Part shown: positions 1,112 to 61,220 of the stretch, piece by piece
Position numbering within the stretch: position 1 is the first letter of the stretch
Layout: every line of letters begins with the position of its first letter
Virus record (IMG/VR): IMGVR_UViG_3300026078_000017
Span: 248,001-312,000 of that record
Direction: 5' to 3' (one strand)
Length of the DNA: 64,000 bases
Made by a program: the position numbers and the translations under genes
The notes under the pieces: generated by a model
Told to the model about the DNA's origin: nothing
Databases searched by the model: none
Seen by the model: only the letters and a program-made list of their open reading frames with translations

Positions 1112-1413
1112 CACGTCAGAAGAAAGTCAAGCATTTACCTGGCAAGATTCTTGAAATGCGTGCCAATGGATGTGTGATGTATTTTTTCTCAGATGAAGAC
1201 AATAATACTTCCAACCTCAAACACCTTCACAAGGGAAATCTCTTTATGATACTTGACACGGTCAAGTCAGAGGATGTTCCAGGCGAAGCCTGGCAAAAAA
1301 GCAACCCTCAAGAAAAGTGGTGTCGAGTTTGGCACTTCAAGTCTAATCTGATTGGATACATTGCCCTAGAGGACATAATCGTCTTCACAGAAGAAACTCG
1401 GTGGTTGACATGA
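1108..1413 (+). CDS. small SH3-like protein (GD family)
   Basis: LPGKILE...GNLFMILD; ATGA overlap. Confidence 0.65.
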   Translation: MTRQKKVKHLPGKILEMRANGCVMYFFSDEDNNTSNLKHLHKGNLFMILDTVKSEDVPGEAWQKSNPQEKWCRVWHFKSNLIGYIALEDIIVFTEETRWLT

Positions 1414-1622
1414 GCACTATTCTGCGAACAGGAGACATTATCCGTTATCGGCCAGCAGCCCTTGGTACAGTATCCTTGGTTTTGACAGAACCAATTTTGG
1501 TAAACAGTCGTTGTTGGCGTGTTAAAACGTGGGACCTAACCCGAAATGAACTGTCGGGTGCAGTCTTTTACACAATCAAGAACAATGCCGATCCCAACTG
1601 GGAAGTTATTTACCACATATGA
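1401..1622 (+). CDS. small SH3/KOW-like protein (GD family)
   Basis: RTGDIIRY...LVL...WDL...DPNWEVI; tandem paralog of next gene. Confidence 0.75.
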   Translation: MVDMSTILRTGDIIRYRPAALGTVSLVLTEPILVNSRCWRVKTWDLTRNELSGAVFYTIKNNADPNWEVIYHI

Positions 1623-1978
1623 CCAAAGGTGACAACAGGTATTTGCCAGAAGTAGGTGACTTGATCCGTTACCGTCGTCAGGAGTTTATCGAAGGTTTGC
1701 ACCTGGTTCTTTCTACTCCAGAAAAAGCCAGAAATTCAGCTTATGCCATGTATGTGGGTGGCGTGCCTGTGCATATGGACTCTTGGGTTGTGTCAGTTTG
1801 GGAATTGACTGGAATGTGTGAAAGCGGTGCAAGCTTTCAGAAGATCAACAGTCCAGATCCCAATTGGGAAATCGTCCTCAAGTTCAAGCCATCACACACG
1901 AGTCACCAGACACAGGTGCAAGGTGCAAGTATTCCGGAATGTCCTGATTGCTCAGGAAGTACACCAGACCGTCTGTAA
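1619..1978 (+). CDS. small SH3/KOW-like protein (GD family)
   Basis: PEVGDLIRY...LVL...WEL...DPNWEIV. Confidence 0.7.
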   Translation: MTKGDNRYLPEVGDLIRYRRQEFIEGLHLVLSTPEKARNSAYAMYVGGVPVHMDSWVVSVWELTGMCESGASFQKINSPDPNWEIVLKFKPSHTSHQTQVQGASIPECPDCSGSTPDRL

Positions 1979-2223: not shown

Positions 2224-2457
2224 TCAAGGTGCTCTAGAAATCAACTTCCAATATTTCTGAGTTGATTCAACGATACCTAAGTCACGCTTTTCCATGGTTT
2301 CCAGGTCAAGGCCGACAAATTGGGTGTGAACGGGACTGACAGGAGTTACCGAAAGAACAAGCACAAAAAGCATGTCTCTTTCTAGAAAAGAAGATTCGTC
2401 TTCCTCGGAAAATCTTACCAGATCTCCGACTTTTATGCTGTCATGCCTAATCGTCAT
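2224..2457 (-). CDS. small SH3/KOW-like protein (GD family)
   Basis: IKVGDLVRF...VLVL...GLDL...WKLISR. Confidence 0.75.
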   Translation of the reverse strand: MTIRHDSIKVGDLVRFSEEDESSFLERDMLFVLVLSVTPVSPVHTQFVGLDLETMEKRDLGIVESTQKYWKLISRAP

Positions 2458-2677
2458 CTTCAATCCGAGCAACAAAGTGCCAACATTTTTCGGTTGACGT
2501 GATAATGCCACATTGGTCGTACTGCATGGTATCAAGATTCAGACCATCGAAATCTGTGTGACCTTCCTTGCGTGGAATCAGCTTCAAGATCAAGAAACAC
2601 TTGACATGGAAGTCACTTTCGGGCCTTGACTTGAAGGAAACAACATCCCCAACCCTAACTTCATTCCATTTAATCAC
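2447..2677 (-). CDS. small SH3/KOW-like protein (GD family)
   Basis: VRVGDVVSF...FLIL...GLNL...WHFVAR. Confidence 0.75.
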   Translation of the reverse strand: MIKWNEVRVGDVVSFKSRPESDFHVKCFLILKLIPRKEGHTDFDGLNLDTMQYDQCGIITSTEKCWHFVARIEDDD

Positions 2678-2683
2678 ATAAAC

Positions 2684-2746
2684 ACCTTAGCATATAAGCT
2701 TGTTCTTGTCAAAGGGTTTGACAAGACACAAAAACCGTGCTAAAGT
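2684..2746. promoter_or_regulatory. back-to-back divergent sigma70-type promoters
   Basis: Minus TTGACA(2712-2707)..TGCTAAGGT; plus TTGACA(2718-2723)-17bp-TAAAGT. Confidence 0.7.
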
Positions 2747-2756
2747 CTCAGGTGAT

Positions 2757-3035
2757 ATGAATCGACAAGATATTAAGGTAGGTGACTTACTTGAGTGGAC
2801 AGGTAAAATGATGAATGAGGTTGGCATCATTTTGGTCCTAGAGATTTACACTCAAGACTTTACGGTGGAAGATCCAAACCTTGGAATGAAACCAACCTTG
2901 ACGAAACATCGTTACATGCCTGAGAGAACAGTATTTCTTGGGTTGTCGCTCAAAGACAACGACAAGGAGGTTTATGCTCTCAATAAAGATACCGAATCTT
3001 TTTGGCGTCTTGTGGAGCGTGCTAAAACAACATAA
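2757..3035 (+). CDS. small SH3/KOW-like protein (GD family)
   Basis: IKVGDLLEW...ILVLE...GLSL...WRLVER. Confidence 0.75.
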   Translation: MNRQDIKVGDLLEWTGKMMNEVGIILVLEIYTQDFTVEDPNLGMKPTLTKHRYMPERTVFLGLSLKDNDKEVYALNKDTESFWRLVERAKTT

Positions 3036-5787: not shown

Positions 5788-6071
5788 GTCCAGATTATAT
5801 CAGTTTCCTCTGACCCGTCAAGTACTCGTTCACCATTTCTGATAAGATGAGCCTGAGGCTTTGCCTGGTTTTGTTCATCAAAGAACACACGTTGGATCTT
5901 TTGGGCTTGCAGAGAAAAGCCAAATATGTCAAGATAAAGATCTTCCTTGTTAAGGATATACGGTGCACCCAAATCCCCAAATCTCTCAGAGTTGATTTTG
6001 GTAATAATCCATGCTACCTTCTGGCGAGGGATTACAATCAAGTCACCAACCTGAACAGAACAAAGTTTCAC
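5781..6071 (-). CDS. small SH3/KOW-like protein (GD family)
   Basis: VQVGDLIV...LIRNGERV. Confidence 0.7.
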   Translation of the reverse strand: MKLCSVQVGDLIVIPRQKVAWIITKINSERFGDLGAPYILNKEDLYLDIFGFSLQAQKIQRVFFDEQNQAKPQAHLIRNGERVLDGSEETDIIWTC

Positions 6072-6304
6072 AACGGTATTCTCTCAATTGAGCTTGCATC
6101 CCAACCAAGAATATTGTAGTGTTTGACCTTGTGGCCTAAGTGAAAATCATACACCGTAATATTTCTTCCTGGATCATTGGGATCCTCAATGTCGATGTTG
6201 TCAACAGACAACACAAGGGAATATCTTTTCCCATATTTGTGGTCTTTTTGAATGAGTATGTCACCAGGTGATACATCACGTGCAGCAAGAAGAGTTGTAG
6301 TCAC
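6068..6304 (-). CDS. small SH3/KOW-like protein (GD family)
   Basis: RDVSPGDILI...LVLSVD...GWDA; tandem paralog. Confidence 0.75.
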   Translation of the reverse strand: MTTTLLAARDVSPGDILIQKDHKYGKRYSLVLSVDNIDIEDPNDPGRNITVYDFHLGHKVKHYNILGWDASSIERIPL

Positions 6305-6528
6305 AGAGAAATCCTTTGAGTGACCTCAGCATCCCACCCATCAATAATGTTTGGCTTGTATATAACACGTTCTTGGGTGTTTAGGTCGTATAAGGTGCAA
6401 CCTGGTCTATAACTGTTGACAGGATCAAAATCAACAGACAACACCAATAGACACTTGGGACCATTCTTGAGACCTGAACGAATGAGCAGATCTCCGAGTT
6501 TTAGGTCTCTGACGGGAAGGAGTTTCAT
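6301..6528 (-). CDS. small SH3/KOW-like protein (GD family)
   Basis: RDLKLGDLLI...LVLSVD...GWDA. Confidence 0.75.
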   Translation of the reverse strand: MKLLPVRDLKLGDLLIRSGLKNGPKCLLVLSVDFDPVNSYRPGCTLYDLNTQERVIYKPNIIDGWDAEVTQRISL

Positions 6529-16557: not shown

Positions 16558-16571
16558 TTCTCTGACGAAAT

Positions 16572-19578: not shown

Positions 19579-19824
19579 TTATTCCTTGGGCCAGATTTGC
19601 ACGCCATCACGAAATACTATCTCAGGACTTTCAATAGGCGTGGCGACTAGACTAAGTGAGCTTTTTTTAGCTCCACTTTTACCAAAAACAAACGCTTCAC
19701 CTTGACCAATCAAGGAAATGATGAGATACCAGTCATGGGTGTCGTAAATTAAGTCACCGACTTGAAGCTCATCTCTAAAGTCACCAAAAACAAGTCTATC
19801 GACATACTTGATAGGAAGTCCCAC
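19579..19824 (-). CDS. small SH3/KOW-like protein (RDGxxIWP subfamily)
   Basis: LQVGDLIY...FRDGVQIWP. Confidence 0.75.
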   Translation of the reverse strand: MGLPIKYVDRLVFGDFRDELQVGDLIYDTHDWYLIISLIGQGEAFVFGKSGAKKSSLSLVATPIESPEIVFRDGVQIWPKE

Positions 19825-19826
19825 AG

Positions 19827-20132
19827 TTAGATTTGTTCCTTAGGCCAGATTTTCTTTCCATCTCGCCAGATTTCATCATAGGACAACAAGCCAGGTTCTA
19901 GGTCCCATGAACAGGTTTCGTGTGTGGTGAGACACCACAACTTCATGTAACGAGTCATGTCAGTACCAAAACGTGAGGAGTCTTCTGGTTCATATTCCAA
20001 ACACAAAAACCAACCTTTATTACGGGTTTCAGGAAAATCATTTCTGGTAAACCACAGGTCACCAGGCTGGACTACTTCTCTTGCGGACATACCTTCTTGT
20101 TCTTCGTTTTCGACAATGTCCCAGTTGGCCAT
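19827..20132 (-). CDS. small SH3/KOW-like protein (RDGxxIWP subfamily)
   Basis: VQPGDLW...WRDGKKIWP. Confidence 0.75.
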   Translation of the reverse strand: MANWDIVENEEQEGMSAREVVQPGDLWFTRNDFPETRNKGWFLCLEYEPEDSSRFGTDMTRYMKLWCLTTHETCSWDLEPGLLSYDEIWRDGKKIWPKEQI

Positions 20133-20413
20133 ATTTTCTTTCCGTCTCGAAAAATCTGCATGAGTCTCTTAGACAACAAGGCTGAGGTGTAAATCAGGTG
20201 TTTGGTATTATCTTCAAGACACAAGACATTCCAATAAACGTCGTCTGGAAGACCCATGAATTCTGGTGGTGGCATGTGAGGTGACACATCCAAAATAAGA
20301 TATTTTATCCACGTCTCCTCAGAGCCCTGAATTTTTAGGTACAGCAAGTCACCAATCTGACATACCGTACAAATCCTGAGCTTGTCATCCATCGGCATCC
20401 ACAAGAGTACCAC
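20072..20413 (-). CDS. small SH3/KOW-like protein (RDGxxIWP subfamily)
   Basis: QIGDLLY...YLILD...FRDGKKIWP. Confidence 0.75.
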   Translation of the reverse strand: MVLLWMPMDDKLRICTVCQIGDLLYLKIQGSEETWIKYLILDVSPHMPPPEFMGLPDDVYWNVLCLEDNTKHLIYTSALLSKRLMQIFRDGKKIWPTGTLSKTKNKKVCPQEK

Positions 20414-29016: not shown

Positions 29017-29262
29017 CTAAGGCTGGTCAGAGTCTTCTCCATCAGTCGAAATAACCATCCAACCCTGTAAAATAACATCAAGTCTCTGAGAGTTTTCAAA
29101 CTTCTCATTGGTGTTTAGATCAAGCCAAGTCATGGACTTATACAGTCCACTTGACTCGTCAAGTTCACAATTGGAGATTTTCAACAACATATAACAGCCA
29201 CTAGTAGCGTTTTTAAGAACGTCTCCAACATGAAGATCTGAAAATGTTGTTGCTTGTTTCAT
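29017..29262 (-). CDS. small SH3/KOW-like protein (GD family)
   Basis: FSDLHVGDVL...WLDL. Confidence 0.75.
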   Translation of the reverse strand: MKQATTFSDLHVGDVLKNATSGCYMLLKISNCELDESSGLYKSMTWLDLNTNEKFENSQRLDVILQGWMVISTDGEDSDQP

Positions 29263-29489
29263 TCTGGTGACTCAACGGTAAAGTTGTCCCAAAGCTCTTC
29301 ATCACCAATCCAAGATGCTTTCATGGTTGTTATGTGTTTTAGAGACAGAACCCTAAAGAGATAATAGTGCTGATACTCAGGTGTGGTAAAAGGTTCTTTA
29401 CTTAAGATCAACCAAAAGCTTTTATCATGCTTGTTTGTAATCAAGTCACCAGCTTCAAGATCGCCAAATTTCTCTTTACGTTTGGTCAC
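29259..29489 (-). CDS. small SH3/KOW-like protein (GD family)
   Basis: FGDLEAGDLI...WLIL. Confidence 0.75.
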   Translation of the reverse strand: MTKRKEKFGDLEAGDLITNKHDKSFWLILSKEPFTTPEYQHYYLFRVLSLKHITTMKASWIGDEELWDNFTVESPE

Positions 29490-29751
29490 TAGATTTGACC
29501 TTGTGCAACCTGCAATGAGTTAAGACCTCTGAGCGTCCATCACCGAACAAACCAGAAATGTGGTTGTTTTCCATTTCAAGAATTTTTACATACCAGGTAT
29601 TTTGCAGTCGCTCTTTTACTTCCAAGACCATCCAGAAAATAGAGAAGTTTAAGCCAGTTTCCTGACTTATCCTAAGCAGTTCCAGAATATCCCCAGGTTC
29701 CAGATCCTGGAAATAAACGGGTGGTGGAAGGCGGCTATCGACAGAAGACAT
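29476..29751 (-). CDS. small SH3/KOW-like protein (GD family)
   Basis: FQDLEPGDIL...WMVLE. Confidence 0.75.
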   Translation of the reverse strand: MSSVDSRLPPPVYFQDLEPGDILELLRISQETGLNFSIFWMVLEVKERLQNTWYVKILEMENNHISGLFGDGRSEVLTHCRLHKVKSSDQT

Positions 29752-29759
29752 AGTGATAT

Positions 29760-29987
29760 TCACTCGGGCAAAAGAAAACTCCACATGCTCTGATATCCCT
29801 CAGACTCAAATGCAGAGCTGTGTGTATCACACAGACTATTTAGATGCCAAGTCTTGTAGTGATGAAAATAGGGTCGTGAACTTTCATACTTCAAGATCAA
29901 TTCATATGGTTTATCACCATAGAAAAGTAAAGTCCCTGGTGGCAATGGCGACTTAGGAAAAACGTGAGATGGCTTTTTCACGGCCAT
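29760..29987 (-). CDS. small SH3/KOW-like protein (GD family)
   Basis: LPPGTLL...ELILKY. Confidence 0.65.
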   Translation of the reverse strand: MAVKKPSHVFPKSPLPPGTLLFYGDKPYELILKYESSRPYFHHYKTWHLNSLCDTHSSAFESEGYQSMWSFLLPE

Positions 29988-36178: not shown

Positions 36179-36457
36179 ATGAAGATTGGAATGCATGTTT
36201 CGGTGATCGAGTCGGGTGCGCGTGGTGTGCTTGTCGGCCTTGAGGGTGAGACGGCTACGGTTCGTCTCCGCAATGAGGACAAGACGCTTTCGGCCAGCGA
36301 GAGCACGTATGCGGTGAGTGCACTCAAGGGTGAGAAGGGTCGTCCGGTTCGTCTGGATCGCCTTGCCGCTCAGGATGCCACGGTGACGGCTGAGGCTCCC
36401 GCTGCGGAGACGGCTGTCGAGTCGGAGACGTCCACGGATGAGGTTTCGGCTGCCTGA
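36179..36457 (+). CDS. small SH3-like KGRP protein
   Basis: MKIGMHV...GETATVRL...KGRPVRL; strong leader. Confidence 0.8.
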   Translation: MKIGMHVSVIESGARGVLVGLEGETATVRLRNEDKTLSASESTYAVSALKGEKGRPVRLDRLAAQDATVTAEAPAAETAVESETSTDEVSAA

Positions 36458-37196: not shown

Positions 37197-37448
37197 ATGC
37201 TTGATCCCAATTATTACCTTGACGCAAGAGTTGGGGACATTTGGGACATTGAAGGCACAGCTTGGCGCATTGTAGTCTTGGTAATAGAACCACTTGACTC
37301 AGAAGGTCGTGCCATGTGTCTCAAGTTGAGATTTTGGAATGATGGGAACGATGAAACTCATCGTGGTCCTAGAATATCTGCCACTGCATTTGTTCATGGC
37401 CGTAAAAGATCGACCTTGATCGCAAGGATTGACGACGAAAATCCTTGA
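37197..37448 (+). CDS. small SH3/KOW-like protein (GD family)
   Basis: ARVGDIW...VLVIEP...LIAR. Confidence 0.75.
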   Translation: MLDPNYYLDARVGDIWDIEGTAWRIVVLVIEPLDSEGRAMCLKLRFWNDGNDETHRGPRISATAFVHGRKRSTLIARIDDENP

Positions 37449-37478
37449 CCAAAATCGAGAGTCTGCTAAGACCTAGTC

Positions 37479-39898: not shown

Positions 39899-40177
39899 GT
39901 GGGACCAGGAGAAAAAGCAAGGATTCGTGTAAGAGGTGGTCAAGTTCCAGAACTTGGTGACCTCATTTACATTGAAGAGAACTTTGTTGACTCCTTGTCG
40001 ATTTATGGCATAGTGTGTAGCGAACCAGTACCGATTAGTTTTATTGGACCACCATCCAAAAAATTGCAAACAGAGGTTTTTAACCTTTTTACGCAACAAA
40101 AAGAACGGTTTCTATTCACGACAGACACCTATGGTTCTTGTTTAGTTCAAACATATGAAAGCAAAGAACGGACTTGA
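39899..40177 (+). CDS. small SH3/KOW-like protein (GD family)
   Basis: PELGDLIY...VFNL. Confidence 0.7.
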   Translation: MGPGEKARIRVRGGQVPELGDLIYIEENFVDSLSIYGIVCSEPVPISFIGPPSKKLQTEVFNLFTQQKERFLFTTDTYGSCLVQTYESKERT

Positions 40178-40415
40178 GGTAGAGATTGGGGACTTGTGGT
40201 CTTGGAAAATGGCGCCACTCAACGACAAAACAGATAACATCTTTCTTATTTTGAACGCAGAAATCGAAACACTTAAAGTAGATGGCGTTACACACGAACA
40301 AATAGTTTTCGAGGCATTTTGTTTTGAATACCACAAACGACGAAGGTTTCTGTTTCGAAACGATGCTAGATTTTACACTCTCATTTCAAGGTTAGACAAT
40401 GGTAAAGACGGTTAA
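40155..40415 (+). CDS. small SH3/KOW-like protein (NGLEVExGDLWS subfamily)
   Basis: KNGLEVEIGDLWS...YTLISR. Confidence 0.75.
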   Translation: MKAKNGLEVEIGDLWSWKMAPLNDKTDNIFLILNAEIETLKVDGVTHEQIVFEAFCFEYHKRRRFLFRNDARFYTLISRLDNGKDG

Positions 40416-40614
40416 TGGACTTGAGGTTGAACTTGGTGACCTTTGGTCATTTAGAACCGTAGACGAAGAAGACAAGTTGATTATGATTATCAGACTTGCC
40501 AAACTTCCAGGTGGAGATTCATCATTTCAGGTTCTCGACATGTCAACCAATGAAATCAAGAACTTTGGTTTTGCTCTGTTGCCTTGGAGATATGCCCTTA
40601 TTTCGAGAACTTGA
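40399..40614 (+). CDS. small SH3/KOW-like protein (NGLEVExGDLWS subfamily)
   Basis: VNGLEVELGDLWS...YALISR. Confidence 0.75.
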   Translation: MVKTVNGLEVELGDLWSFRTVDEEDKLIMIIRLAKLPGGDSSFQVLDMSTNEIKNFGFALLPWRYALISRT

Positions 40615-40650: not shown

Positions 40651-41199
40651 ATGAGTCCAGCAGAAATTGCCTTAGTCATGATGTTGACCCGTGTGTGTAT
40701 TTCGGAAGGCGGGTTCGATGGTCATAAAGAGTGTGCAGTAATTGTACATGCCTTGACCGAACAAGCTGCCGAAAGAGGAATACCTCTCAGAACACAGGTT
40801 TGTTTATATGCTCCAAATTCTTGCCTGAGACACCGAACCGATGCACGAAGGTGGATCAATGACCTTGATCCAGAACGACGTTCTAGGCCCTCAGGATTTC
40901 CTAGAATGCTTTCTTGGACCACATACCGTCCGATGGTGGCTGCCATGTATGTGACAGCTTACAGGGCTTATACGGGCGCCATTGCAAGTCCATGTCCAGG
41001 AGCATTTCACTGGGGTGCCTCCTGGTGTCGTTCTTGTAGAGTCCGAATGCGAGAAGCAGGATTTCAGAGAATTCAGTGTGAAGGCGTAGGAAATCACTGG
41101 TGGGGACACCCTCAGGATTTTAGAAAACCTGAGCCAGAGACATTTGACCCCGTAGCATTTTGTGCTATCTCTTATTCATGGATGCCACCGAGCCAGTAG
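40651..41199 (+). CDS. putative SleB/Hydrolase_2-like cell wall hydrolase
   Basis: LTRVCISEG (catalytic Glu position), PCPGAFHW, VGNHWW. Confidence 0.55.
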   Translation: MSPAEIALVMMLTRVCISEGGFDGHKECAVIVHALTEQAAERGIPLRTQVCLYAPNSCLRHRTDARRWINDLDPERRSRPSGFPRMLSWTTYRPMVAAMYVTAYRAYTGAIASPCPGAFHWGASWCRSCRVRMREAGFQRIQCEGVGNHWWGHPQDFRKPEPETFDPVAFCAISYSWMPPSQ

Positions 41200-41546
41200 A
41201 ACACTGCCGAATCTGTCGTCACCCATTCAAGGATTTTGGATGGGGCAAACAGTCGTTGTGTTTTGGATTTGCCTGTTCTCGGTGTGTGAACAGGGCTTGT
41301 CGACTTGTTCGACGTCATAATCGTCGTGCACGGCTTGCGGACGTGAAGGGAAAGATTTTTGCTTTTGACTGGTTGTCGATCTTGTTTGCGCATGCATTCA
41401 AGTGTGCTACATGTCAAAAGGAAAAGGAGTTGACTCTTGATCACATTCGACCACTGTCGACAGGCGGCCAAAATTTGTCATGGAATATTCAGCCTCTATG
41501 CCTCTGCTGTCATGGCGAGAAGGACAATATCCGAAAGCGAGTTTGA
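41178..41546 (+). CDS. HNH endonuclease
   Basis: CATC...LTLDHIRPLSTGGQN...NIQPLCLCCH. Confidence 0.9.
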   Translation: MDATEPVEHCRICRHPFKDFGWGKQSLCFGFACSRCVNRACRLVRRHNRRARLADVKGKIFAFDWLSILFAHAFKCATCQKEKELTLDHIRPLSTGGQNLSWNIQPLCLCCHGEKDNIRKRV

Positions 41547-41895: not shown

Positions 41896-41934
41896 GGGTT
41901 GCATCCCTTTAGAAACCTAGTATAGTGTGTGGGT

Positions 41935-42264
41935 ATGTCCACAAAAAGATCCCGCAAGCTACAAATTGGTGACTTCATCAAGTTTGATCCAAATGCTGTC
42001 GTGAAGAAGTTTCACAAGCATCCGATGGACGTGATGCACTACCTTGAAGACATTAACAACCCCAAGTTGGTTTACACTGACTCAGAAAATATTTTTCCTG
42101 AGGTTGAGCAGAACTATCTCATTTCAGATGCCCGAGACTACTTTGACCGTTTCGGTTATCGTACACGGGTCTGTAAGGTCGTAGGACTGGTCGATTCCTT
42201 GGATGGGTGGATGCCTGCTGCGAGTCTAAAGCTCGTGTATGAAGGCTCTGAGGACCCACAATGA
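41935..42264 (+). CDS. small SH3/KOW-like protein (GD family)
   Basis: LQIGDFIKF...GWMPAASLKL. Confidence 0.7.
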   Translation: MSTKRSRKLQIGDFIKFDPNAVVKKFHKHPMDVMHYLEDINNPKLVYTDSENIFPEVEQNYLISDARDYFDRFGYRTRVCKVVGLVDSLDGWMPAASLKLVYEGSEDPQ

Positions 42265-45134: not shown

Positions 45135-45839
45135 ATGGCCTACAAGATTGCAACGCTTGTTCTCAAGTCCAAGAACGTCAAGATCGGTGAGGTTTCTGCA
45201 ACCTACGCCAGCATTGACGGGTCGTGTCCCTCGGATTGCATGCACAAGGGTGCGGGTTGTTATGCTCAGGCTGGCAACGTGGGAATCCACGTGTCACGCA
45301 TGAATGCAACCAATAACGTGCGTACCCGTCAGGATGCTCGTGAGGTTGCTCGTGAGGTTGCTCGTGAGGAAGCACGTCAGATCAAGGCTGCAATCGCCAG
45401 CGGAGACGACACGCGCCCCTTGCGAGTGCATGTTTCTGGTGATTGTCGTACGCCTTCCGCAGCACGTGAGATTGCAACGGCAGTGGAAAATTGGAAGGCT
45501 CCCGTGTGGGGCTACACTCACGCGTGGAAGAAAGTCTCACGTCAGGATTGGGGACGTGCTAGCGTTCTTGCCTCGGTGGATTCTGCGGAAGACCTTCCCC
45601 TGGCATTTTCTCGTGGGTATGCGCCTGCTATCGTGGTAGAGAAGCACCCAGAGAATGGCAAGGCTTTCCTTCGTGAGGATGGTGTCAAGGTTATTCCTTG
45701 CCCTGCACAAACCCGTGAGGACGTGACGTGTGTCAAGTGTGGTCTGTGCATGAATGCCGACAAGCTTCATGGCATGAACGCTGCTATCTCGTTCGCGGCT
45801 CATGGAGTTTCCAAGCGAAAGTTGACCGTTATCAAGTAA
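45135..45839 (+). CDS. gp88-like Cys-rich Fe-S / radical-SAM-like phage protein
   Basis: SCPSDC...GCYA, RVHVSGD, WGYTH, CPAQ...CVKCGLC. Confidence 0.7.
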   Translation: MAYKIATLVLKSKNVKIGEVSATYASIDGSCPSDCMHKGAGCYAQAGNVGIHVSRMNATNNVRTRQDAREVAREVAREEARQIKAAIASGDDTRPLRVHVSGDCRTPSAAREIATAVENWKAPVWGYTHAWKKVSRQDWGRASVLASVDSAEDLPLAFSRGYAPAIVVEKHPENGKAFLREDGVKVIPCPAQTREDVTCVKCGLCMNADKLHGMNAAISFAAHGVSKRKLTVIK

Positions 45840-46604: not shown

Positions 46605-46628
46605 CTCCACAACAGGTTGAGGTCACTC

Positions 46629-47513
46629 ATGGGTTGTCTGAATTCGCAGGGTCAATTCTCTCACTGGTTTGCAAATATACACCTGAGTGGGGCTTGTAAT
46701 CGATCCTGTTACTTCTGTATCGGGCAACACATGCCCGGTCTTGACCCGATCAACAACCTGGACACTTGGCCTTTGCCAGGCATGGACGAGTTTTTGACGA
46801 AGTGTCGAGAGCAGGGCGTTAAGGAAATTAACCTGACTGGCTCTGACACCGATCCCTTGCTCTATCGTCATCTTCCTGAGTTGACGGCATTTCTCCGAAA
46901 GGAGATTCCTGGTGCCATCCTCGGAATCCGGACGAACGGGGTTTTGGAAGAGCGGCACCCTGACTTGATTGACCTGTTTGACAAGGGAAGCATTTCTGTC
47001 ACTTCCTTTGACTCGGCAATCTACAAGAAGACCATGGGTCATGGAAGCCCGCCAGACGTCGCAGGATTTCGTCAGAGGCATCCGGGGTTCCGGGTGAAGG
47101 GGAACGTGGTCCTATGTCCTGAGACCGTCACAAAGAATTCTAATGGCTTCTGTGACCTTGATGCGACCTTGAAATACTTCGCTTCCAATGGATTTGAGAA
47201 GGTCAACATCCGTGAGCCTTACGGGCAGACTCATATTGGTGATCCGCTCAAGGGATCTCAGTTTGAGCAGATTGGTACGATCTATGCCATGCCGATTTAC
47301 AATGTCTATGGCATGCAGGTTACCTATTGGGATGTTCACTACGTGGAGGTTGAATCTGTCAATCTCTATGCCAACGCCAACGTGTCTGTGACTTATCCAG
47401 TCACACTTGGACATGACCCTGTTCTTGGCACGGTGTTTGACCAGAGCAAGTTCTTGCAGGGTCGTCAGCATGAACAGTGGAAAAACAAGCGAAAGCTTTC
47501 GGTGGTGAGGTAA
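46629..47513 (+). CDS. radical SAM enzyme
   Basis: CNRSCYFC (CxxxCxxC), NLTGSDTDP, IRTNG. Confidence 0.9.
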   Translation: MGCLNSQGQFSHWFANIHLSGACNRSCYFCIGQHMPGLDPINNLDTWPLPGMDEFLTKCREQGVKEINLTGSDTDPLLYRHLPELTAFLRKEIPGAILGIRTNGVLEERHPDLIDLFDKGSISVTSFDSAIYKKTMGHGSPPDVAGFRQRHPGFRVKGNVVLCPETVTKNSNGFCDLDATLKYFASNGFEKVNIREPYGQTHIGDPLKGSQFEQIGTIYAMPIYNVYGMQVTYWDVHYVEVESVNLYANANVSVTYPVTLGHDPVLGTVFDQSKFLQGRQHEQWKNKRKLSVVR

Positions 47514-48478: not shown

Positions 48479-48516
48479 ACCCTTGCATTCATGTGAAAAG
48501 GTGCTAAAACACCACT

Positions 48517-48714
48517 ATGACCACATCACAGAAGTCGCTAGAGGATGACATTCAGATTCTTGGTGGACTTGCAGAAGTTCACATGACTGCCACGACCAAG
48601 GAAGACTTTCAGCTTTGTCAGCGTGTTCGGGCCACGATCACGTGCTACATGCTGAATCGTCCAGGCTGGATCAAGATTGAATCTGGCTTGAACCTTTCCA
48701 CGTCCATGACGTGA
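48517..48714 (+). CDS. hypothetical protein
   Basis: Own promoter TTGCAT..TGCTAAAAC. Confidence 0.65.
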   Translation: MTTSQKSLEDDIQILGGLAEVHMTATTKEDFQLCQRVRATITCYMLNRPGWIKIESGLNLSTSMT

Positions 48715-48998
48715 CAATGGAAAACAAATTTCCATTTGAGGTTGGAGATCTCATTGGCTTCAAGCCAAACATGCAGCCAGGAAAAATGGTGCCAGATTGG
48801 CTTGGACTGGTTTTGACAGCAACAAAACCATATCGCTCATCCTTAGACGACATGGAGGATGAGGATGGCATGTTAGTACGATATAAGATTTTCTGTTTTC
48901 AAACAGAAAACGTGACCTCCTGGTACCATTATGAAGATGACATGCCTCGTTGGTACTTGGTTGCCTCACCCATCGAAAATCTTGTGAGACATGACTGA
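48711..48998 (+). CDS. small SH3/KOW-like protein (PFxVGD subfamily)
   Basis: PFEVGDLI...LGLVL. Confidence 0.75.
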   Translation: MTMENKFPFEVGDLIGFKPNMQPGKMVPDWLGLVLTATKPYRSSLDDMEDEDGMLVRYKIFCFQTENVTSWYHYEDDMPRWYLVASPIENLVRHD

Positions 48999-49206
48999 AC
49001 GAACAAAACCTTTTGGTGTTGGTGACATTGTTGGCAACATGTGGATTGAACCACCAGAGTTGGTCTTGGTTGTTGAGGTTAGAGTTGCTAAGTCATTTTT
49101 TGAGTATGACGTGATTTACCTAGACAAGAAACAGGGTGGACATTCGACTTGGGCAGAACTTTCTGACTTTGATCCCATGTTTAAGCTTTTTTATGAGGCA
49201 GATTAA
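48991..49206 (+). CDS. small SH3/KOW-like protein (PFxVGD subfamily)
   Basis: RTKPFGVGDIV. Confidence 0.75.
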   Translation: MTERTKPFGVGDIVGNMWIEPPELVLVVEVRVAKSFFEYDVIYLDKKQGGHSTWAELSDFDPMFKLFYEAD

Positions 49207-49461
49207 ATGTTAAAGCCTCGTACAAAGCCCTTTAAGGCAGGAGACGTTATCGAGTGGAGGTGGGAACAGAGTTGGTCCCGAGTTTTGGTCCTTGATGTAA
49301 CCTATGAGAAACAAGTAGCTAATCCTATATGGGTTTATTCTGTTTTGCATCTCAGCGACTCAAATCCACATTGTATTTATTTGCAGACCAAGTCTATTTG
49401 GCATGAAAATGAATTTCCGTTTGCGCAAAACATCAACCTGGTGTATAGTGTTGAAGAATGA
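49207..49461 (+). CDS. small SH3/KOW-like protein (PFxVGD subfamily)
   Basis: RTKPFKAGDVI. Confidence 0.75.
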   Translation: MLKPRTKPFKAGDVIEWRWEQSWSRVLVLDVTYEKQVANPIWVYSVLHLSDSNPHCIYLQTKSIWHENEFPFAQNINLVYSVEE

Positions 49462-49709
49462 TAAGAAGGCATCCATTTAAGGTTGGCGACCTAGTCAAGT
49501 TCAAGGTTGACAATGACGACTTCATTACAGCCCTTGTTGTCGACGTGAACGTCAGAAGTACCAAAAATATGGGCTTTCACTATTTCTACGATATTGTCCA
49601 CATTGGTGGAAGCACTCATGGAAGCAAGGGCATTTGGAATGAGTGTCCAGGTTTTGGAATAACGTTTTCAAATGACTTTATCCTGGTGTCATCATGCAAG
49701 ACAACTTGA
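49458..49709 (+). CDS. small SH3/KOW-like protein (PFxVGD subfamily)
   Basis: PFKVGDLV. Confidence 0.75.
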   Translation: MIRRHPFKVGDLVKFKVDNDDFITALVVDVNVRSTKNMGFHYFYDIVHIGGSTHGSKGIWNECPGFGITFSNDFILVSSCKTT

Positions 49710-49948
49710 AGTTTGTGCCATTCAAGGTTGGTGACATTGTCGAGCGTGACCTAGAAGGTGCTCCGAAGCGACTAGGATTAATTTTAGATATTTGGCCTTT
49801 TAGAACCAACACCACTGAAAGACAGTGTTTGCTTTACAAAGTGTGTCTTTTGGATGTGGCTATGTGGCGAATAGTCTCTTGGCAACATGAAAATTTGCCA
49901 AGATGGCCAAATATTCACTACAGGCTTATTTGTGGAACTGACACATGA
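49694..49948 (+). CDS. small SH3/KOW-like protein (PFxVGD subfamily)
   Basis: PFKVGDIVER...GLILD. Confidence 0.75.
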   Translation: MQDNLKFVPFKVGDIVERDLEGAPKRLGLILDIWPFRTNTTERQCLLYKVCLLDVAMWRIVSWQHENLPRWPNIHYRLICGTDT

Positions 49949-50187
49949 GAAAGACTTTCGAGATTGGTGATGTGGTCGAACGAACCTTTCGAGGCAATGT
50001 TCGTACCACATACACTGGTTTGATTTTGGATGTGACAAACACCAAAACAAACAAGTTATATACGGTTTTTGTTTTTGGTGCTAATCAGAAAGTCACCTGG
50101 ATCCACGACTTGATGTATCGTGATACAACAGTCACCTACAAACTCTGTTCTGAGGATTCCGAAAAAGAAGACAAAGAAACCGTTTGA
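49945..50187 (+). CDS. small SH3/KOW-like protein (PFxVGD subfamily)
   Basis: FEIGDVVER...GLILD. Confidence 0.75.
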   Translation: MRKTFEIGDVVERTFRGNVRTTYTGLILDVTNTKTNKLYTVFVFGANQKVTWIHDLMYRDTTVTYKLCSEDSEKEDKETV

Positions 50188-50269
50188 CAAGTTCCTGAAT
50201 GGTGCTAAAACAAAATGGTGATGAGGAGGTGACAATCAAGTCGCCCTCAAACAAATAGAGAAAAAGACA

Positions 50270-50452
50270 ATGAAGATCGGTATGATGGTTGAGACGGCTC
50301 GTTCGTGTGGCGCTCTTGGTGAGCGTGGTGGTGTGGATCTCGGCGCGGAGACGACGGGCAAGCTGCTCGGCATTCGCGGAGATCACTGCAAGTTGGAGCT
50401 TGCGGATGGCAAGGTCGTTTACCTTGCGACCGAATATCTGAAGTGGCGTTGA
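50270..50452 (+). CDS. small SH3-like protein
   Basis: MKIGMMV...; GC-rich, purine-rich leader, own promoter. Confidence 0.75.
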   Translation: MKIGMMVETARSCGALGERGGVDLGAETTGKLLGIRGDHCKLELADGKVVYLATEYLKWR

Positions 50453-50528
50453 GCCCAAAAAGACGTTCTCACGTTCGATTCGGCGCTGTTGTGGCGTTTA
50501 GGGTTGACAGCGTGAGTTGATCACCTGG

Positions 50529-50566
50529 AAGGGTGGCAGGAGAAATCTTGCCACCTTTTCTTTTTT
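50529..50566 (+). terminator. intrinsic terminator
   Basis: GGTGGCAGG...CTTGCCACC-TTTTCTTTTTT. Confidence 0.75.
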
Positions 50567-51791: not shown

Positions 51792-52442
51792 ATGTTTTGG
51801 ATTTACGCGCTTCTTGATGAAAAAGGTTTTCCTAGATATGTTGGAAAAACCTATGACTTGAAAGAACGACTGAGAAATCATCTCAAAGAGAAAGGTCGTT
51901 GTCATCGAATCTGTTGGCTTAAATCTATGAAATCTAAGGGACTCAATCCCACATTGATTGCATTGGATTCTAAGCCAACAGAGCAAGAAGCTTTGGATGA
52001 AGAAGTTTTTTTGATATCTTATTTTCGTTATTTGGGTGCTGATTTAACCAACGGAACAGATGGTGGTGAAGGAATCTCTGGACACAAACATTCCTTAGAA
52101 ACAAGAAACAAAATGTCCAAAAGTCGGATAGGACATATAACTTCACCTGAAACTCGACGTAAGTTGTCTGAATCAAACAAAGGTAAACCACATAAAGGTG
52201 GATGGCATCATAATGAAACAAGTAAGAAAAAAATAACAGGTAGAAAACCAAGGCAAATTCAAGACTCGCATGGAAAAGTCTTTGCGTCTGTTCGTGAAGC
52301 TGCTAAAGTGTTTGGTGTAAGCATCGATCAAATCAAATATGCCCTTCAAAAGGGCACTCCCACCCACAAAGTACCAAGGTTACATTATGTTGAAGGTTCA
52401 AGAATATCTACTGACGCACACATTGAACGATTTAGCTCGTGA
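51792..52442 (+). CDS. GIY-YIG homing endonuclease with NUMOD3 repeats
   Basis: WIYAL...RYVGKT...R; LTNGTDGGEG; HSLETRNKMS / SPETRRKLS. Confidence 0.9.
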   Translation: MFWIYALLDEKGFPRYVGKTYDLKERLRNHLKEKGRCHRICWLKSMKSKGLNPTLIALDSKPTEQEALDEEVFLISYFRYLGADLTNGTDGGEGISGHKHSLETRNKMSKSRIGHITSPETRRKLSESNKGKPHKGGWHHNETSKKKITGRKPRQIQDSHGKVFASVREAAKVFGVSIDQIKYALQKGTPTHKVPRLHYVEGSRISTDAHIERFSS

Positions 52443-53568
52443 ACATGGCGTCTATTCTCGCTTCAGCACGAAAAATCCTTTGAAGTGGTCTCTAAATTAC
52501 GACCAGATCGAAGCGAAGGATGCAGATCCGATCGCTCAGGAGTGTCGTGGTCTGGTTCTTGCGACGGAAGAGCCGTTGGCAGACATGGATCCGACGCTTG
52601 GCGCAATGGGCGTTACGGTTGGCGAGACGAAGATTCGTGGTCTTCCCATGGGACGGTTTTTCAACTACGGCCAGGGCTCTGCCGCTACGGTTGACCTGGA
52701 TTCGCCTGACACGCGCTTCTGTGAGAAGCTCGACGGAACCCTGTGCATCATGTATTGGGATCGTCACCTTGGAGAGTGGTCCATTGCCACGCGATCTGTT
52801 CCAGACGCTGACCTTCCTATGGATGGTTTTGGCAATCAGACGTTCACGGATCTCTTCTGGAAGGCTTTTAAGGCTTCTGGTGGAATGATTTCGCAGTTGG
52901 ACTATGCACGTGGGTGGCATACCTTCTGTTTCGAGCTTTGCACGCCCGATAACCAGATTGTGGTCAAGTACCCGGACTACAAGGTTTATCTCCTGGCTGC
53001 TCGTGAGAACGAGACCGGAATCAACATGGATCCTCAGCCTTGGGCGGTCCAGATGTCGGTGGAGTGTGCTCCGACGTATCGTTTCGGCTCCACGGACGAA
53101 ATGCTGAATTTCGTTTCCTCGCGAAATCCCTTGGCTCACGAGGGAATCGTCGTTGTTGACAAGGACTTCAATCGAGTCAAGGTCAAGAATGCGGGATATC
53201 TCGCTTACAACAAGATCAAGGACTCTGTTGCAAAGTCTCCTCGTGCGGTAATGGAGATCGTTCTTCTTGGCAAGGAAGACGACGTTATGCCGCTCGTTCC
53301 CGAGCATGTGCAGAAGGTCATCCTTGACACCAAGGATCGCCTGGCGGCATTTTTGCGAGTCACGGACGAGGAATACACGGCTTGCTATCACACGGACCGT
53401 AAGACGTTTGCTCTTGCCATTCAGGCGGGTTCTGGTAACATGGGACCACAGATGGCACGATGGTCGGGAAAGTGTGCTTCTACCAAGGACTGGATCTTCT
53501 CTCAGCGGAAGGATGGAAATTGGTCAGATGGGTTCCTTGACTCGCTTATGCGTATGTGTAAGGAATAA
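52387..53568 (+). CDS. T4 Rnl1-like RNA ligase
   Basis: RFFNY, EKLDGT (motif I), FEL..P.NQIVV.Y, EGIVV (IV), RVKVK (V). Confidence 0.9.
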   Translation: MLKVQEYLLTHTLNDLAREHGVYSRFSTKNPLKWSLNYDQIEAKDADPIAQECRGLVLATEEPLADMDPTLGAMGVTVGETKIRGLPMGRFFNYGQGSAATVDLDSPDTRFCEKLDGTLCIMYWDRHLGEWSIATRSVPDADLPMDGFGNQTFTDLFWKAFKASGGMISQLDYARGWHTFCFELCTPDNQIVVKYPDYKVYLLAARENETGINMDPQPWAVQMSVECAPTYRFGSTDEMLNFVSSRNPLAHEGIVVVDKDFNRVKVKNAGYLAYNKIKDSVAKSPRAVMEIVLLGKEDDVMPLVPEHVQKVILDTKDRLAAFLRVTDEEYTACYHTDRKTFALAIQAGSGNMGPQMARWSGKCASTKDWIFSQRKDGNWSDGFLDSLMRMCKE

Positions 53569-53843
53569 TGGGAACAGACTGGCGGATTGAGGTAGTCCCT
53601 GGTGCTCATCCAGAGCATGTCGGGGACTATTTTCAATTGACAGCATATCGCGTGAATCTCATGTGGCTTCCCAAAAACACCCTATCTGCCTTAAATGAAA
53701 CATGGAGGGTTTCTGACATAGCCCTTTATCTAGGAAACAATGAGTTTCTGGTTAATGGAGAAAGGCTTGTTATGTTTAATGACCTTCATCTTGATTGGAA
53801 TTTCTACTTGACGCCAGCAAAGATCCTACCGAAGGACGACTGA
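53568..53843 (+). CDS. small protein (YLG subfamily)
   Basis: HVGDYF...LYLGNNEF. Confidence 0.7.
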   Translation: MGTDWRIEVVPGAHPEHVGDYFQLTAYRVNLMWLPKNTLSALNETWRVSDIALYLGNNEFLVNGERLVMFNDLHLDWNFYLTPAKILPKDD

Positions 53844-53845
53844 AA

Positions 53846-54130
53846 ATGTCACAGGATTTGAATCAAACACGTCCAATTGGCGGACATGCTGATAAAATCG
53901 GTGAGCTTTTTGTCATGTGTGTGGATCGTCCAGGTCCAATAAGGTGGAATTCCTCAGACTTGTTAGATGATGCCTGGTATCCTGAGGATGTTGTCATGTA
54001 TCTTGGTGACAACATGTTTTGGTGGATTAAAGGAAATTACTTGCGCGAAGTTTATTCTAAGCTAGAACCTTGGGACGACTGGTTTAGTCCTTGGAAGCCC
54101 ACATGCACAACTTCACAAAAGTCAGGATGA
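53846..54130 (+). CDS. small protein (YLG subfamily)
   Basis: IGELF...MYLGDNMF. Confidence 0.7.
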   Translation: MSQDLNQTRPIGGHADKIGELFVMCVDRPGPIRWNSSDLLDDAWYPEDVVMYLGDNMFWWIKGNYLREVYSKLEPWDDWFSPWKPTCTTSQKSG

Positions 54131-54402
54131 ACAAAAAGGCCAAGAAGATCTGGGACCAACGGATTGGAAGCCTCTTTGTTTTCAACAAAGAGGGCTACAA
54201 ATATCCTCGATGGGACCTTGAGCCTATCGTTCCTATCGAGTCAAGAAGTTCAACTCTAAAAAAATCCTCGGTGGATCATTGGGGATTTATTTTGTATCTT
54301 GGTGAAGACCTGTTTTTCTCTTATGGGCTTAACCACAAGATTAGGATGATGAGTGACATGTTTGAGTGGGATGGTTGGCTCAAGTCTGTCGATCAGGAGT
54401 AA
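54127..54402 (+). CDS. small protein (YLG subfamily)
   Basis: IGSLF...LYLGEDLF. Confidence 0.7.
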   Translation: MNKKAKKIWDQRIGSLFVFNKEGYKYPRWDLEPIVPIESRSSTLKKSSVDHWGFILYLGEDLFFSYGLNHKIRMMSDMFEWDGWLKSVDQE

Positions 54403-61068: not shown

Positions 61069-61220
61069 TGTGGTATCCTTCTTTCTTTCTTGTTTGGTTT
61101 CTTGTTGTTTGGGAACAGGCACTAGAACTTTTGCTTCTTCTTTTTCTCTTCGGCGATCTCGCCAACAACTTAGGTTTAGCAGAACTCCCATTGTGGTCAA
61201 CCTCTTTCTGATCTTTTCTT

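What the first reader, a model, noticed from the sequence alone, without database searches (positions are those of the whole stretch)
48711..50187. Tandem sub-clusters record birth-and-death (accordion) evolution of the family
Seen: neighbours share private motifs. Six consecutive (P)FxxGD genes lie here. Others are the DPNWE pair (1401-1978), RD..GD..LVLSVD..GWDA pair (6068-6528), RDGxxIWP trio (19579-20413), FxDLxxGD trio (29017-29751), NGLEVExGDLWS pair (40155-40614) and YLG trio (53568-54402). Long nucleotide identity between neighbours is not visible by eye. Inference: repeated local duplication followed by fast divergence under diversifying selection.
Basis: partly seen in the sequence, partly recalled or inferred. 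Interest (0 to 1): 0.7.

Follow-up and report, generated by a model that had tools for sequence, protein, structure and literature searches.

The report
Tandem small-barrel gene family in jumbo phage
A 320-kb soil phage carries about 80-100 diverged copies of one small, unannotated beta-barrel protein. Neighbouring copies, including the six flagged here, are measurably closer kin than distant ones, so the family grew by local duplication, but nothing shows recent copying or positive selection.

Summary
Window 48711-50187 holds six back-to-back, co-oriented ORFs of 71-95 aa that share (P)FxxGD. They belong to a family of at least 81 members (about 97 at a looser cut-off). Nearly all lie in one roughly 70-kb arm of a 320-kb phage genome from a rhizosphere metagenome.

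Adjacent members are far more alike than random family pairs (z=8.8). Ten of 80 adjacent pairs exceed the 99th percentile, where 0.8 are expected. Nineteen genes have their best match next door, against 2 expected. All seven named sub-clusters check out, although the YLG trio was not picked up by the family profile.

The signal is partial: about three quarters of neighbours look like random pairs. A related phage (core proteins 55-72% identical) shares two sub-families but in different numbers: PFxxGD 6-7 against 2, and GDLW 2 against 7. This fits birth-and-death evolution.

Two parts of the interpretation are not supported. There are no recent copies (no nucleotide similarity; best pairs are 38-50% identical in protein), so a strict accordion is not shown. 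Diversifying selection cannot be tested because dS is saturated.

The predicted fold is an SH3-like (KOW/Tudor-like) barrel with no Pfam or PHROG match. The array sits in one promoter-to-terminator unit. Function is unknown; my guess is an early-expressed binder repertoire.

The parts
48483..48510 (+). Promoter-like site (TTGCAT, spacer, TGCTAAAAC: a sigma-70-type -35 plus extended -10), 7 nt upstream of the leader ORF of the array's transcription unit
   Evidence: The motif class is strongly over-represented: TTGACN{14,16}TGCTAA occurs 15 times in the window against 0.06 expected.
48517..48714 (+). 65-aa leader ORF, not a family member. Its stop overlaps the GTG start of the first array gene.
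48711..48998 (+). PFxxGD family gene 1 (95 aa from GTG, or 93 aa from ATG 48717). AF2 model: five-stranded SH3-like barrel plus a short C-terminal helix.
48991..49206 (+). PFxxGD family gene 2 (71 aa). Its best family match is gene 3 (score 71).
49207..49461 (+). PFxxGD family gene 3 (84 aa). An independent ESM Atlas model also matches KOW/Tudor-like barrels.
49458..49709 (+). PFxxGD family gene 4 (83 aa). It forms a window-only clade with genes 2 and 3 (support 90/52).
49694..49948 (+). PFxxGD family gene 5 (84 aa). Sister of gene 6 (score 78; support 85/87).
49945..50187 (+). PFxxGD family gene 6 (80 aa)
50184..50211 (+). Second promoter-like site of the same class, at the 3' end of the array
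50527..50560 (+). Intrinsic-terminator-like hairpin (15-pair stem followed by a T run), downstream of the array and of a 60-aa ORF at 50270-50452
1401..1978 (+). DPNWE tandem pair (46% aa identity over 59 aa)
2224..3035 (.). Trio 2224-2535(-), 2447-2677(-) and 2700-3035(+). Monophyletic in the quick tree. Divergent promoter-like sites lie between the second and third genes.
6068..6528 (-). RD..GD..LVLSVD tandem pair (45% aa identity over 71 aa; sister tips in the tree)
19579..20413 (-). RDGxxIWP trio (scores 56/47/56). The similarity is concentrated in a short C-terminal motif.
29017..29784 (-). FxDLxxGD trio (scores 41/61/41)
40155..40614 (+). GDLW (NGLEVE) pair. The related phage has 7 members of this sub-family at the syntenic place.
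53568..54402 (+). YLG trio. The three are similar to each other (76/36/59) but are not picked up by the family profile.
45135..45839 (+). DUF7227/GP88-like gene. Conserved anchor, 72% identical in the related phage.
52339..53568 (+). T4 Rnl1-type RNA ligase. Conserved anchor, 67% identical in the related phage.

Best explanation
The six genes are one sub-family (PFxxGD) of a very large paralogous family of small single-domain proteins of about 75-115 aa.

What the proteins look like:
- The predicted fold is a five-stranded SH3-like (KOW/Tudor-like) barrel.
- The conserved signature is [LPF]-x-V-G-D-[LIV]-[ILV], a variable loop, [YFW]-L-V-L-[ED]-V, a variable loop, V-L-D-L-x-T-N, then W.
- At least 81 copies, probably about 100, fill a roughly 70-kb accessory arm of a 320-kb myovirus-like jumbo phage.

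How the family grew (shown):
- It grew by single-gene tandem duplication within operons, followed by deep divergence.
- Copies were gained and lost differentially between related phages. This is birth-and-death evolution.
- The sub-families are older than the split from the nearest available relative.
- Some duplications inside the six (49694/49945, and 48991/49207/49458) appear specific to this lineage.
- All detectable duplications are old. Every detectable copy is an intact ORF, so copies disappear by deletion rather than lingering as pseudogenes.

What the proteins do (inferred):
- The arm is transcribed from about 30 sigma-70-like promoters with an extended -10, so it is probably expressed early by host RNA polymerase.
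- The conserved positions are core strands and the variable positions are loops.
- I therefore propose a repertoire of small binders with different targets, used in host takeover or counter-defence.
For: Family size and placement:
- Iterative profile searches found 53 members at E<1e-3 and 81 at E<0.02, with 0-1 hits to reversed sequences. At E<=1 there are 97 real hits against 2 reversed. All lie at 240-312 kb plus three at 20-37 kb.

Adjacency:
- Adjacent pairs score a mean of 35.6 against a permuted mean of 28.5 (z=8.8). Without the six, z=7.4.
- Ten of 80 adjacent pairs exceed the 99th percentile.
- Nineteen genes have their best match as an immediate neighbour, against 2 expected and a maximum of 9 in permutations.

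Trees:
- Four of 27 sister pairs are immediate neighbours (p=0.004).
- Genomic-block labels need 61 changes, against at least 62 in all 1000 shuffles.
- Monophyly of the six is not rejected (AU p=0.28).

Comparison with the relative:
- It is syntenic, with anchor proteins 55-72% identical.
- The PFxxGD and GDLW sub-families are split at 99/94 support and both span phages.
- Copy numbers are 6-7 against 2, and 2 against 7.
- Family counts per interval between anchors are 8 against 3, 4 against 6, and 4 against 6.

Other points:
- A six-frame scan found no copy with an internal stop.
- Fold: AF2 pLDDT 80. Best structural matches are EF-P domain I/KOW, PWWP, Tudor, YorP, DUF3104 and Hva1_TUDOR.
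- Core conserved, loops variable.
- Promoter class and terminator.
Against: - About three quarters of adjacent pairs are no more similar than random pairs. The family tree is close to saturation (patristic distances about 5), so most history is unreadable.
- The best tree does not recover the six as one clade; 48711 falls elsewhere.
- Support inside the sub-family tree is modest and the branches are long.
- Only one relative was found, and only about 54 kb of it was sampled. Counterparts could lie elsewhere in its genome.
- The direction of change (gain or loss) is not determined.
- The function is pure inference. There is no sequence match to any characterised family. pI ranges from acidic to basic. 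There are no expression data. The promoter assignment rests on consensus resemblance only.
Confidence: 0.75

Rival explanations
1. One reading: an arms-race accordion. Copies are amplified rapidly and then diverge fast under positive (diversifying) selection on binding surfaces.
For: - Loops are hypervariable while the core is conserved.
- Most members have no blastp-detectable orthologue in a relative whose core proteins are 55-72% identical.
- The arm also carries counter-defence-type genes: an RNA ligase, cREC_REC, a kinase and tRNA-Lys.
Against: - No recent or near-identical copies exist.
- dS is saturated. Where it is computable, dN/dS is 0.23-0.47.
- Non-family small ORFs in the arm are equally diverged between the two phages, with a median best-reciprocal-hit identity of about 39% against about 32% for the family (n=13 and 5). 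Relaxed constraint explains the data as well as positive selection does.
Confidence: 0.25
2. A static ancient array. All duplications happened long ago in a common ancestor, and the array has since only diverged in place, with no continuing gain or loss.
For: - All paralogue pairs are deeply diverged, at most 50% aa identity.
- The sub-families predate the split from the relative.
Against: - Copy numbers of the same sub-families and the same syntenic intervals differ in both directions between the two phages.
- The DUF7227-to-RNA-ligase interval of the relative is fully sampled and lacks any detectable counterpart of the six.
- Window-only clades exist inside PFxxGD.
Confidence: 0.15
3. Neighbour similarity is kept up by gene conversion or concerted evolution between adjacent copies, rather than reflecting how recently they duplicated.
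For: Similarity is concentrated in immediate neighbours on the same strand.
Against: - There are no nucleotide-level identity tracts at all between any copies. Close pairs are 47-61% identical in DNA.
- The sub-families group across phages rather than within a genome, which is the opposite of what concerted evolution produces.
Confidence: 0.03
4. Artefact: the ORFs are not real genes, or the shared motif is chance or compositional.
For: The ORFs are short, have weak Shine-Dalgarno signals (16% of family genes), and have no annotated homologues.
Against: - The profile finds 81 hits against 0-1 in reversed controls.
- The ORFs tile the arm without gaps or internal stops.
- Homologues occur in independent metagenomes.
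- The AF2 model is a confident, well-formed barrel.
Confidence: 0.02

Closest known systems
Lineage-specific expansion of about 35 zinc-ribbon genes in Bacillus phage G (Iyer et al. 2021, PMC7824862)
   Same: One small single-domain protein is amplified to dozens of copies within a single jumbo-phage lineage. Its function is unknown, and it is suspected to act as a set of specific binders or regulators.
   Different: The fold differs: an SH3-like barrel rather than a zinc ribbon. The copy number here is two to three times higher (at least 81), whereas that paper called 35 copies 'unprecedented'. Here the tandem structure and a comparison with a relative were analysed.
Multigene families of large eukaryotic DNA viruses (ASFV MGF110/360/505, poxvirus host-range families) and the poxvirus K3L gene accordion
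   Same: Paralogue arrays lie in a variable genome arm. They arose by tandem duplication, their copy number differs between relatives, and they are thought to serve host interaction.
   Different: The classic accordion involves recent, near-identical copies that expand and collapse on laboratory time scales. Here no copy pair shares detectable nucleotide identity. The virus is a phage, and the proteins are much smaller.
Small SH3-like barrel domains: the KOW motif/EF-P domain I (PF00467, PF08207), Tudor-like Hva1_TUDOR (PF11160), DUF1653, DUF3104, DUF4314 and B. subtilis SPbeta YorP
   Same: The predicted five-stranded barrel is of the same size and topology (TM 0.45-0.63). The N-terminal 'xGDxV' strand resembles the start of a KOW motif. 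Many of these domains are stand-alone phage proteins of unknown function.
   Different: No member reaches any Pfam or PHROG threshold. The glycine-rich second half of the KOW motif is absent. All structural E-values are weak (at best 3e-3).
Hyperplastic or accessory regions of T4-like phages: dense small early ORFs behind sigma-70-type early promoters (from my own knowledge)
   Same: An arm of roughly 90-aa ORFs sits behind many host-type promoters and is interspersed with homing endonucleases and RNA-repair genes.
   Different: In T4 the small ORFs are mostly unrelated to each other. Here a third or more of them belong to one family.

Membership tests
Birth-and-death multigene family (Nei and Rooney sense) | Members arise by repeated gene duplication, typically tandem | tested here: met
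   Adjacent members are more similar than random pairs (z=8.8). Ten of 80 adjacent pairs exceed the 99th percentile. Tree and genomic-block labels are associated (p<0.001).
Birth-and-death multigene family (Nei and Rooney sense) | Sub-families group across genomes rather than within a genome, meaning there is no concerted evolution | tested here: met
   The PFxxGD and GDLW sub-families each contain members from the window phage and its relatives, and their split is supported at 99/94. No nucleotide identity tracts exist.
Birth-and-death multigene family (Nei and Rooney sense) | Copy number differs between related genomes through gain and loss | tested here: met
   Counts are 6-7 against 2 (PFxxGD) and 2 against 7 (GDLW). 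Per syntenic interval they are 8/3, 4/6 and 4/6. Only one relative was available and it was only partly sampled.
Birth-and-death multigene family (Nei and Rooney sense) | Some copies become pseudogenes | tested here: not met
   A six-frame scan reading through stops with X found no copy with an internal stop. Loss appears to be by deletion, as expected in a genome limited by packaging. This feature is not essential to the model.
Gene accordion (poxvirus K3L type) | Recent amplification gives near-identical tandem copies | tested here: not met
   There are no blastn self-hits in the window. The closest pairs are 38-50% identical in protein and 47-61% in DNA.
Gene accordion (poxvirus K3L type) | Copy-number polymorphism within a population | tested here: inconclusive
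   Only one public run holds the sequence, and only as one assembled contig. No variants or joints are visible.
Family under diversifying selection | dN/dS above 1 at a subset of sites | tested here: inconclusive
   dS is saturated or not computable for all close paralogue pairs. Where computable, the pairwise ratio is 0.23-0.47. No close orthologues are available.
KOW (PF00467) / EF-P N-terminal (PF08207) | Sequence match to the family profile at the curated threshold | tested here: not met
   hmmscan of 46 members against Pfam at E<=1 gave no KOW or EFP_N hit.
SH3-like small beta-barrel fold (superfold level) | Five-stranded barrel superposable on known SH3-like, KOW or Tudor domains | tested here: met
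   The AF2 model has pLDDT 80 and five strands. TM is up to 0.68 on EF-P domain I, with probability 1.00 but E=0.04. Atlas matches reach TM 0.55-0.72. This rests on prediction only.

The most novel reading that the evidence does not exclude
This may be the largest single-family paralogue expansion yet seen in a bacteriophage: about 80-100 copies, or 15-18% of all ORFs. The family is an undescribed SH3-like barrel confined to a small clade of soil jumbo phages. It would act as an early-expressed, evolvable repertoire of small binders, with each paralogue neutralising a different host or competitor target. That would make it a phage counterpart of the ASFV and poxvirus multigene families.
Probability: 0.3. 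Interest if true: 0.8.

Novelty: new variant of a known kind. Interest (0 to 1): 0.62.

Why it matters
Paralogue expansions are rare in phages because capsid size penalises redundancy. A comparative survey of 224 jumbo phages called a 35-copy expansion 'unprecedented' (PMC7824862). A phage that spends about 7% of its DNA, and about a third of one arm, on 80-100 intact, diverged copies of one tiny domain is presumably under selection to keep that diversity.

If the copies are target-specific binders, the family would offer two things. It would be a natural library of minimal protein scaffolds. It would also give a handle on how large phages manage varied hosts or defence systems.

For the narrower question asked, the result gives a quantitative answer: tandem duplication is demonstrable but old, and selection is untested.

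Tried and rejected
- Pfam and PHROGs scans of family members found no family.
- A word-indexed search of 5.8 billion proteins returned only the genome's own proteins.
- An exhaustive profile search of 1.84 billion representatives gave 34 hits. Of these, 28 were the genome's own, 4 were small proteins from related phage contigs, and 2 were cadherin/Ig-repeat proteins that I judge spurious.
- I used the radical-SAM neighbour to look for relatives. It found 22 IMG/VR jumbo-phage loci, but none has a family member within its 20-kb flanks, and five whole records gave nothing. That gene is therefore a poor marker of kinship.
- The RNA ligase found no IMG/VR relative. There was no megablast match in GenBank phages.
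- Two apparently different relatives (L038 and L039), whose gene lists differed, proved 100% identical in DNA. I first read the difference as gain and loss, then rejected that reading.
- The full 81-tip ML tree is nearly saturated. Clade membership computed on a midpoint root was uninformative.
- dN/dS on paralogues is uninformative because dS is saturated.
- Laying the one available run showed only the source contig.
- Literature searches for comparable phage expansions returned only the phage G case.
- The Shine-Dalgarno survey was too weak to suggest a host.
Full report
SETTING

The window is bases 248001-312000 of a single 320,479-bp contig that the tools class as a virus record. Several genes mark it as a large tailed phage:
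- a baseplate-wedge homologue, an SbcC-like nuclease and a primase elsewhere in the genome;
- a T4 Rnl1-type RNA ligase, a radical-SAM protein and a DUF7227/GP88-like protein in the window.

The only public run holding the sequence is a rhizosphere metagenome. GenBank phages contain nothing similar at the DNA level. From about 240 kb to the contig end the median ORF is about 95 aa, against 150-600 aa in the structural and replication regions.

THE OBSERVATION

The ORF listing shows six co-oriented ORFs at 48711-50187. They are 71-95 aa long and abut or overlap by 4-16 nt. MAFFT aligns them with a shared (P)FxxGD, a hydrophobic LVL strand and a conserved Trp.

THE FAMILY

I started from the six and iterated hmmbuild and hmmsearch over all ORFs of at least 40 aa in the genome.
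- The search converged on 53 members at E<1e-3, with no hit among reversed sequences.
- A looser inclusion threshold (E<0.02) converged on 81 members, with at most one reversed hit.
- At E<=1 there are 97 real hits against 2 reversed hits. All lie at 240-312 kb, plus three at 20-37 kb.

Taking my greedy count of 557 ORFs, the family is about 15-18% of all ORFs and roughly a third of those in the window.

The conserved signature is [LPF]-x-V-G(80/81)-D(68/81)-[LIV]-[ILV], then a variable stretch with insertions, then [YFW]-L-[VI]-L-[EDS]-[VI], then a second variable stretch, then [VL]-[LWF]-[DN]-L-x-[TS]-N, then W (54 of 60). Information content is high in the strands and near zero in the two long loops.

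Other properties:
- No member has two domains.
- No copy carries an internal stop.
- pI ranges widely (median 6.1; 34 acidic and 17 basic members), which argues against one uniform nucleic-acid-binding role.

FOLD

AlphaFold2 with the family alignment gives a five-stranded barrel plus a short helix (pLDDT 80, pTM 0.70). Foldseek's best matches are:
- EF-P domain I/KOW, PWWP, Tudor, chromo-barrel and YorP in the PDB;
- BAH, DUF3104, DUF4314, KOW-like and DUF2945 in AlphaFold DB clusters;
- uncharacterised small phage proteins, DUF1653 and Hva1_TUDOR in BFVD and the ESM Atlas.

All E-values are weak (at best 3e-3), but the fold class is consistent: a small SH3-like barrel. No Pfam or PHROG profile is matched.

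An exhaustive profile search of 1.84 billion representative proteins found only four small non-self proteins. Two further hits were cadherin/Ig-repeat proteins that I regard as spurious. As far as sequence profiles can see, the family is confined to a small clade.

I compared all-against-all Smith-Waterman scores.

On the 53-member set:
- Adjacent pairs average 40.3, against 30.0 for all pairs. No permutation out of 20,000 reached that value.
- Tightly packed same-strand neighbours average 54.5.
- Twenty genes have their best family match next door. Permutations give a mean of 2 and a maximum of 10.

On the 81-member set:
- z=8.8, or 7.4 after removing the six.
- Ten of 80 adjacent pairs exceed the family's 99th percentile, where 0.8 are expected.

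The signal is partial, though.
- Sixty-one of 80 adjacent pairs fall below the 90th percentile.
- In an ML tree of the 81 domains, patristic distances are about 5 substitutions per site, so the tree is close to saturation.
- Only 4 of 27 sister pairs are immediate neighbours (p=0.004).
- Genomic-block labels need 61 changes on the careful tree. Shuffles give a mean of 67.7 and a minimum of 62. Perfect clustering would need 34.
- The six are not one clade in the best tree, because 48711 sits apart. An AU test does not reject their monophyly (p=0.28).

AGE OF THE DUPLICATIONS AND SELECTION

A blastn self-comparison of the window (word size 7) finds nothing but the identity hit. The closest pairs are 38-50% identical in protein and 47-61% in DNA. 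dS is not computable or exceeds 1.6. Where dS is computable, dN/dS is 0.23-0.47.

No duplication is therefore recent. The data say nothing in favour of positive selection; if anything they indicate constraint.

A RELATIVE

Two non-self hits (P0005 and P0025) lie on Logan contigs from another study, one of them 289.7 kb long. I walked along that contig and merged the overlapping loci, which gave 30 kb syntenic with window 36-56 kb.

Anchor proteins are 55-74% identical between the two phages:
- RNA ligase, 67%;
- DUF7227, 72%;
- the 182-aa protein at 40651, 64%;
- an HNH-like protein, 57%;
- the protein at 41929, 55%;
- a short protein at 36179, 74%.

An upstream 20-kb piece of the same phage carries 22 more family members.

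One caution applies here. Two loci whose gene tables looked different (L038 and L039) are 100% identical in DNA, so they count as one relative.

In this relative, the interval between DUF7227 and the RNA ligase is fully covered. It has no radical-SAM gene and no blastp-detectable counterpart of the six. Its only PFxxGD-type genes are a pair (R_10765 and R_11012), embedded upstream of the orthologue of 40651. Conversely, the window's GDLW pair (40155 and 40399) corresponds to seven such genes around the same anchor in the relative.

A careful tree of both sub-families separates them at 99/94, with members of each phage on both sides. A third phage (L009) contributes to PFxxGD. Inside PFxxGD there are window-only clades: 48991+49207+49458 (90/52) and 49694+49945 (85/87).

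Family counts per anchor-bounded interval, window against relative, are 8 against 3, 4 against 6, and 4 against 6.

This is the pattern of birth-and-death evolution. The sub-families are older than the phage split, there is no homogenisation within a genome, and copy numbers shift in both directions.

It cannot be turned into rates. Fast divergence is also not peculiar to the family, because non-family small ORFs of the arm are about as diverged between the two phages.

EXPRESSION CONTEXT

While looking for repeated intergenic words I found a bipartite motif: TTGAC(A), 14-16 nt, then TGCTAA(A/G)(A/G)(T/C). This reads as a sigma-70-type -35 plus an extended -10.
- The strict form occurs 15 times in the window, against 0.06 expected.
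- A looser form occurs 41 times in the genome, 31 of them in the window, against about 9 in shuffles.
- Its strand follows the gene blocks.
- It also occurs in the relative.

One site (48483-48510) lies 7 nt before a 65-aa leader ORF whose stop overlaps the start of the first array gene. The next site sits at the array's end (50184-50211). A strong terminator-like hairpin follows at 50527-50560. The six genes are thus one translationally coupled transcription unit, with no promoter between the copies. This fits duplication of single genes of about 250 bp inside an operon.

By analogy with T4-type early regions (my own knowledge), I infer early expression by the host polymerase. This is not shown.

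WHAT IT PROBABLY DOES

What is shown is a conserved barrel core with hypervariable loops, many intact copies, an accessory arm with host-type promoters, and neighbouring genes typical of conflict with the host. Those neighbours are Rnl1, a cREC_REC domain, an AAA_33 kinase, tRNA-Lys(UUU), and GIY-YIG and HNH nucleases.

What I infer is a repertoire of small binders with different targets, acting in host takeover or counter-defence. I put this at about 0.3. No experiment, annotated homologue or interaction prediction supports it.

VERDICT

The tandem-duplication reading is supported, and the comparison with a relative extends it. The words 'accordion' and 'diversifying selection' go beyond the evidence.

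The scale of the expansion and the novelty of the family make the locus more interesting than the six-gene array alone suggests.

Noticed in passing
window-wide, e.g. 2687-2712(-), 9801-9825(-), 25558-25582(-), 35013-35037(+), 37445-37469(+), 50184-50208(+), 61176-61200(-): A promoter-like motif, TTGAC-N14-16-TGCTAA(A/G)(A/G)(T/C), which reads as a sigma-70-type -35 plus an extended -10. It occurs 15 times in the window against 0.06 expected. Its strand matches the gene blocks, and it is also present in the related phage. It probably marks the early promoters of the arm.
   Followed up: partly
8656-8727(-), 29978-30382(-), 33473-33811(+), 52339-53568(+): tRNA-Lys(UUU), an AAA_33 kinase-like protein, a cREC_REC (cyclic-phosphate processing) domain protein and a T4 Rnl1-type RNA ligase all lie in the same arm. 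Together they look like an RNA-repair answer to anticodon nucleases that cut tRNA-Lys.
   Followed up: no
46617-47513(+): This radical-SAM gene is absent from the syntenic interval of the nearest relative. Yet it has 46-65% identical homologues in 22 IMG/VR jumbo-phage contigs (up to 456 kb) that carry no family members nearby. It appears to be a horizontally moving gene.
   Followed up: partly
7900-18000: A stretch of about 10 kb, mostly on the minus strand, has higher GC (0.48-0.52 against about 0.44) and no family members. It interrupts the family-rich arm and carries the tRNA and several of the promoter-like sites. It may be an inserted module.
   Followed up: no
53568-54402(+): The YLG trio shares hGxhF...hhYLGxxxF and its members are similar to each other, but the family profile does not detect it. 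It is either a separate small tandem family or a very divergent branch. One member has a 36% identical counterpart in the relative.
   Followed up: partly
L012:10001-10540 (protein P0005): In the related phage, two family domains are fused in one 179-aa protein. No such fusion exists in the window's genome.
   Followed up: partly
35488-36327(-) and 41160-41546(+): A GIY-YIG/NUMOD1 homing-endonuclease-like gene and an HNH-like gene (57% identical in the relative) sit among the arrays. These are possible sources of double-strand breaks that could promote rearrangement.
   Followed up: no
41929-42264(+): This family-like gene (QIGDFIKF start; below threshold here, but its orthologue in the relative scores E=7e-3) is 55% identical between the two phages. 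That is as conserved as the anchor genes, so evolutionary rates within the family are heterogeneous.
   Followed up: partly
BFVD matches to model m648bd63295a5: Many of the best viral structural matches have accessions from two narrow series (A0A516L... and A0A516M...). This hints that some other phage genomes also hold several small barrels of this kind. The names were not available.
   Followed up: no
L038 versus L039: The precomputed gene tables of two contigs with 100% identical DNA differ in several small ORFs. Gene lists alone can therefore mimic gene gain and loss in these arrays.
   Followed up: yes
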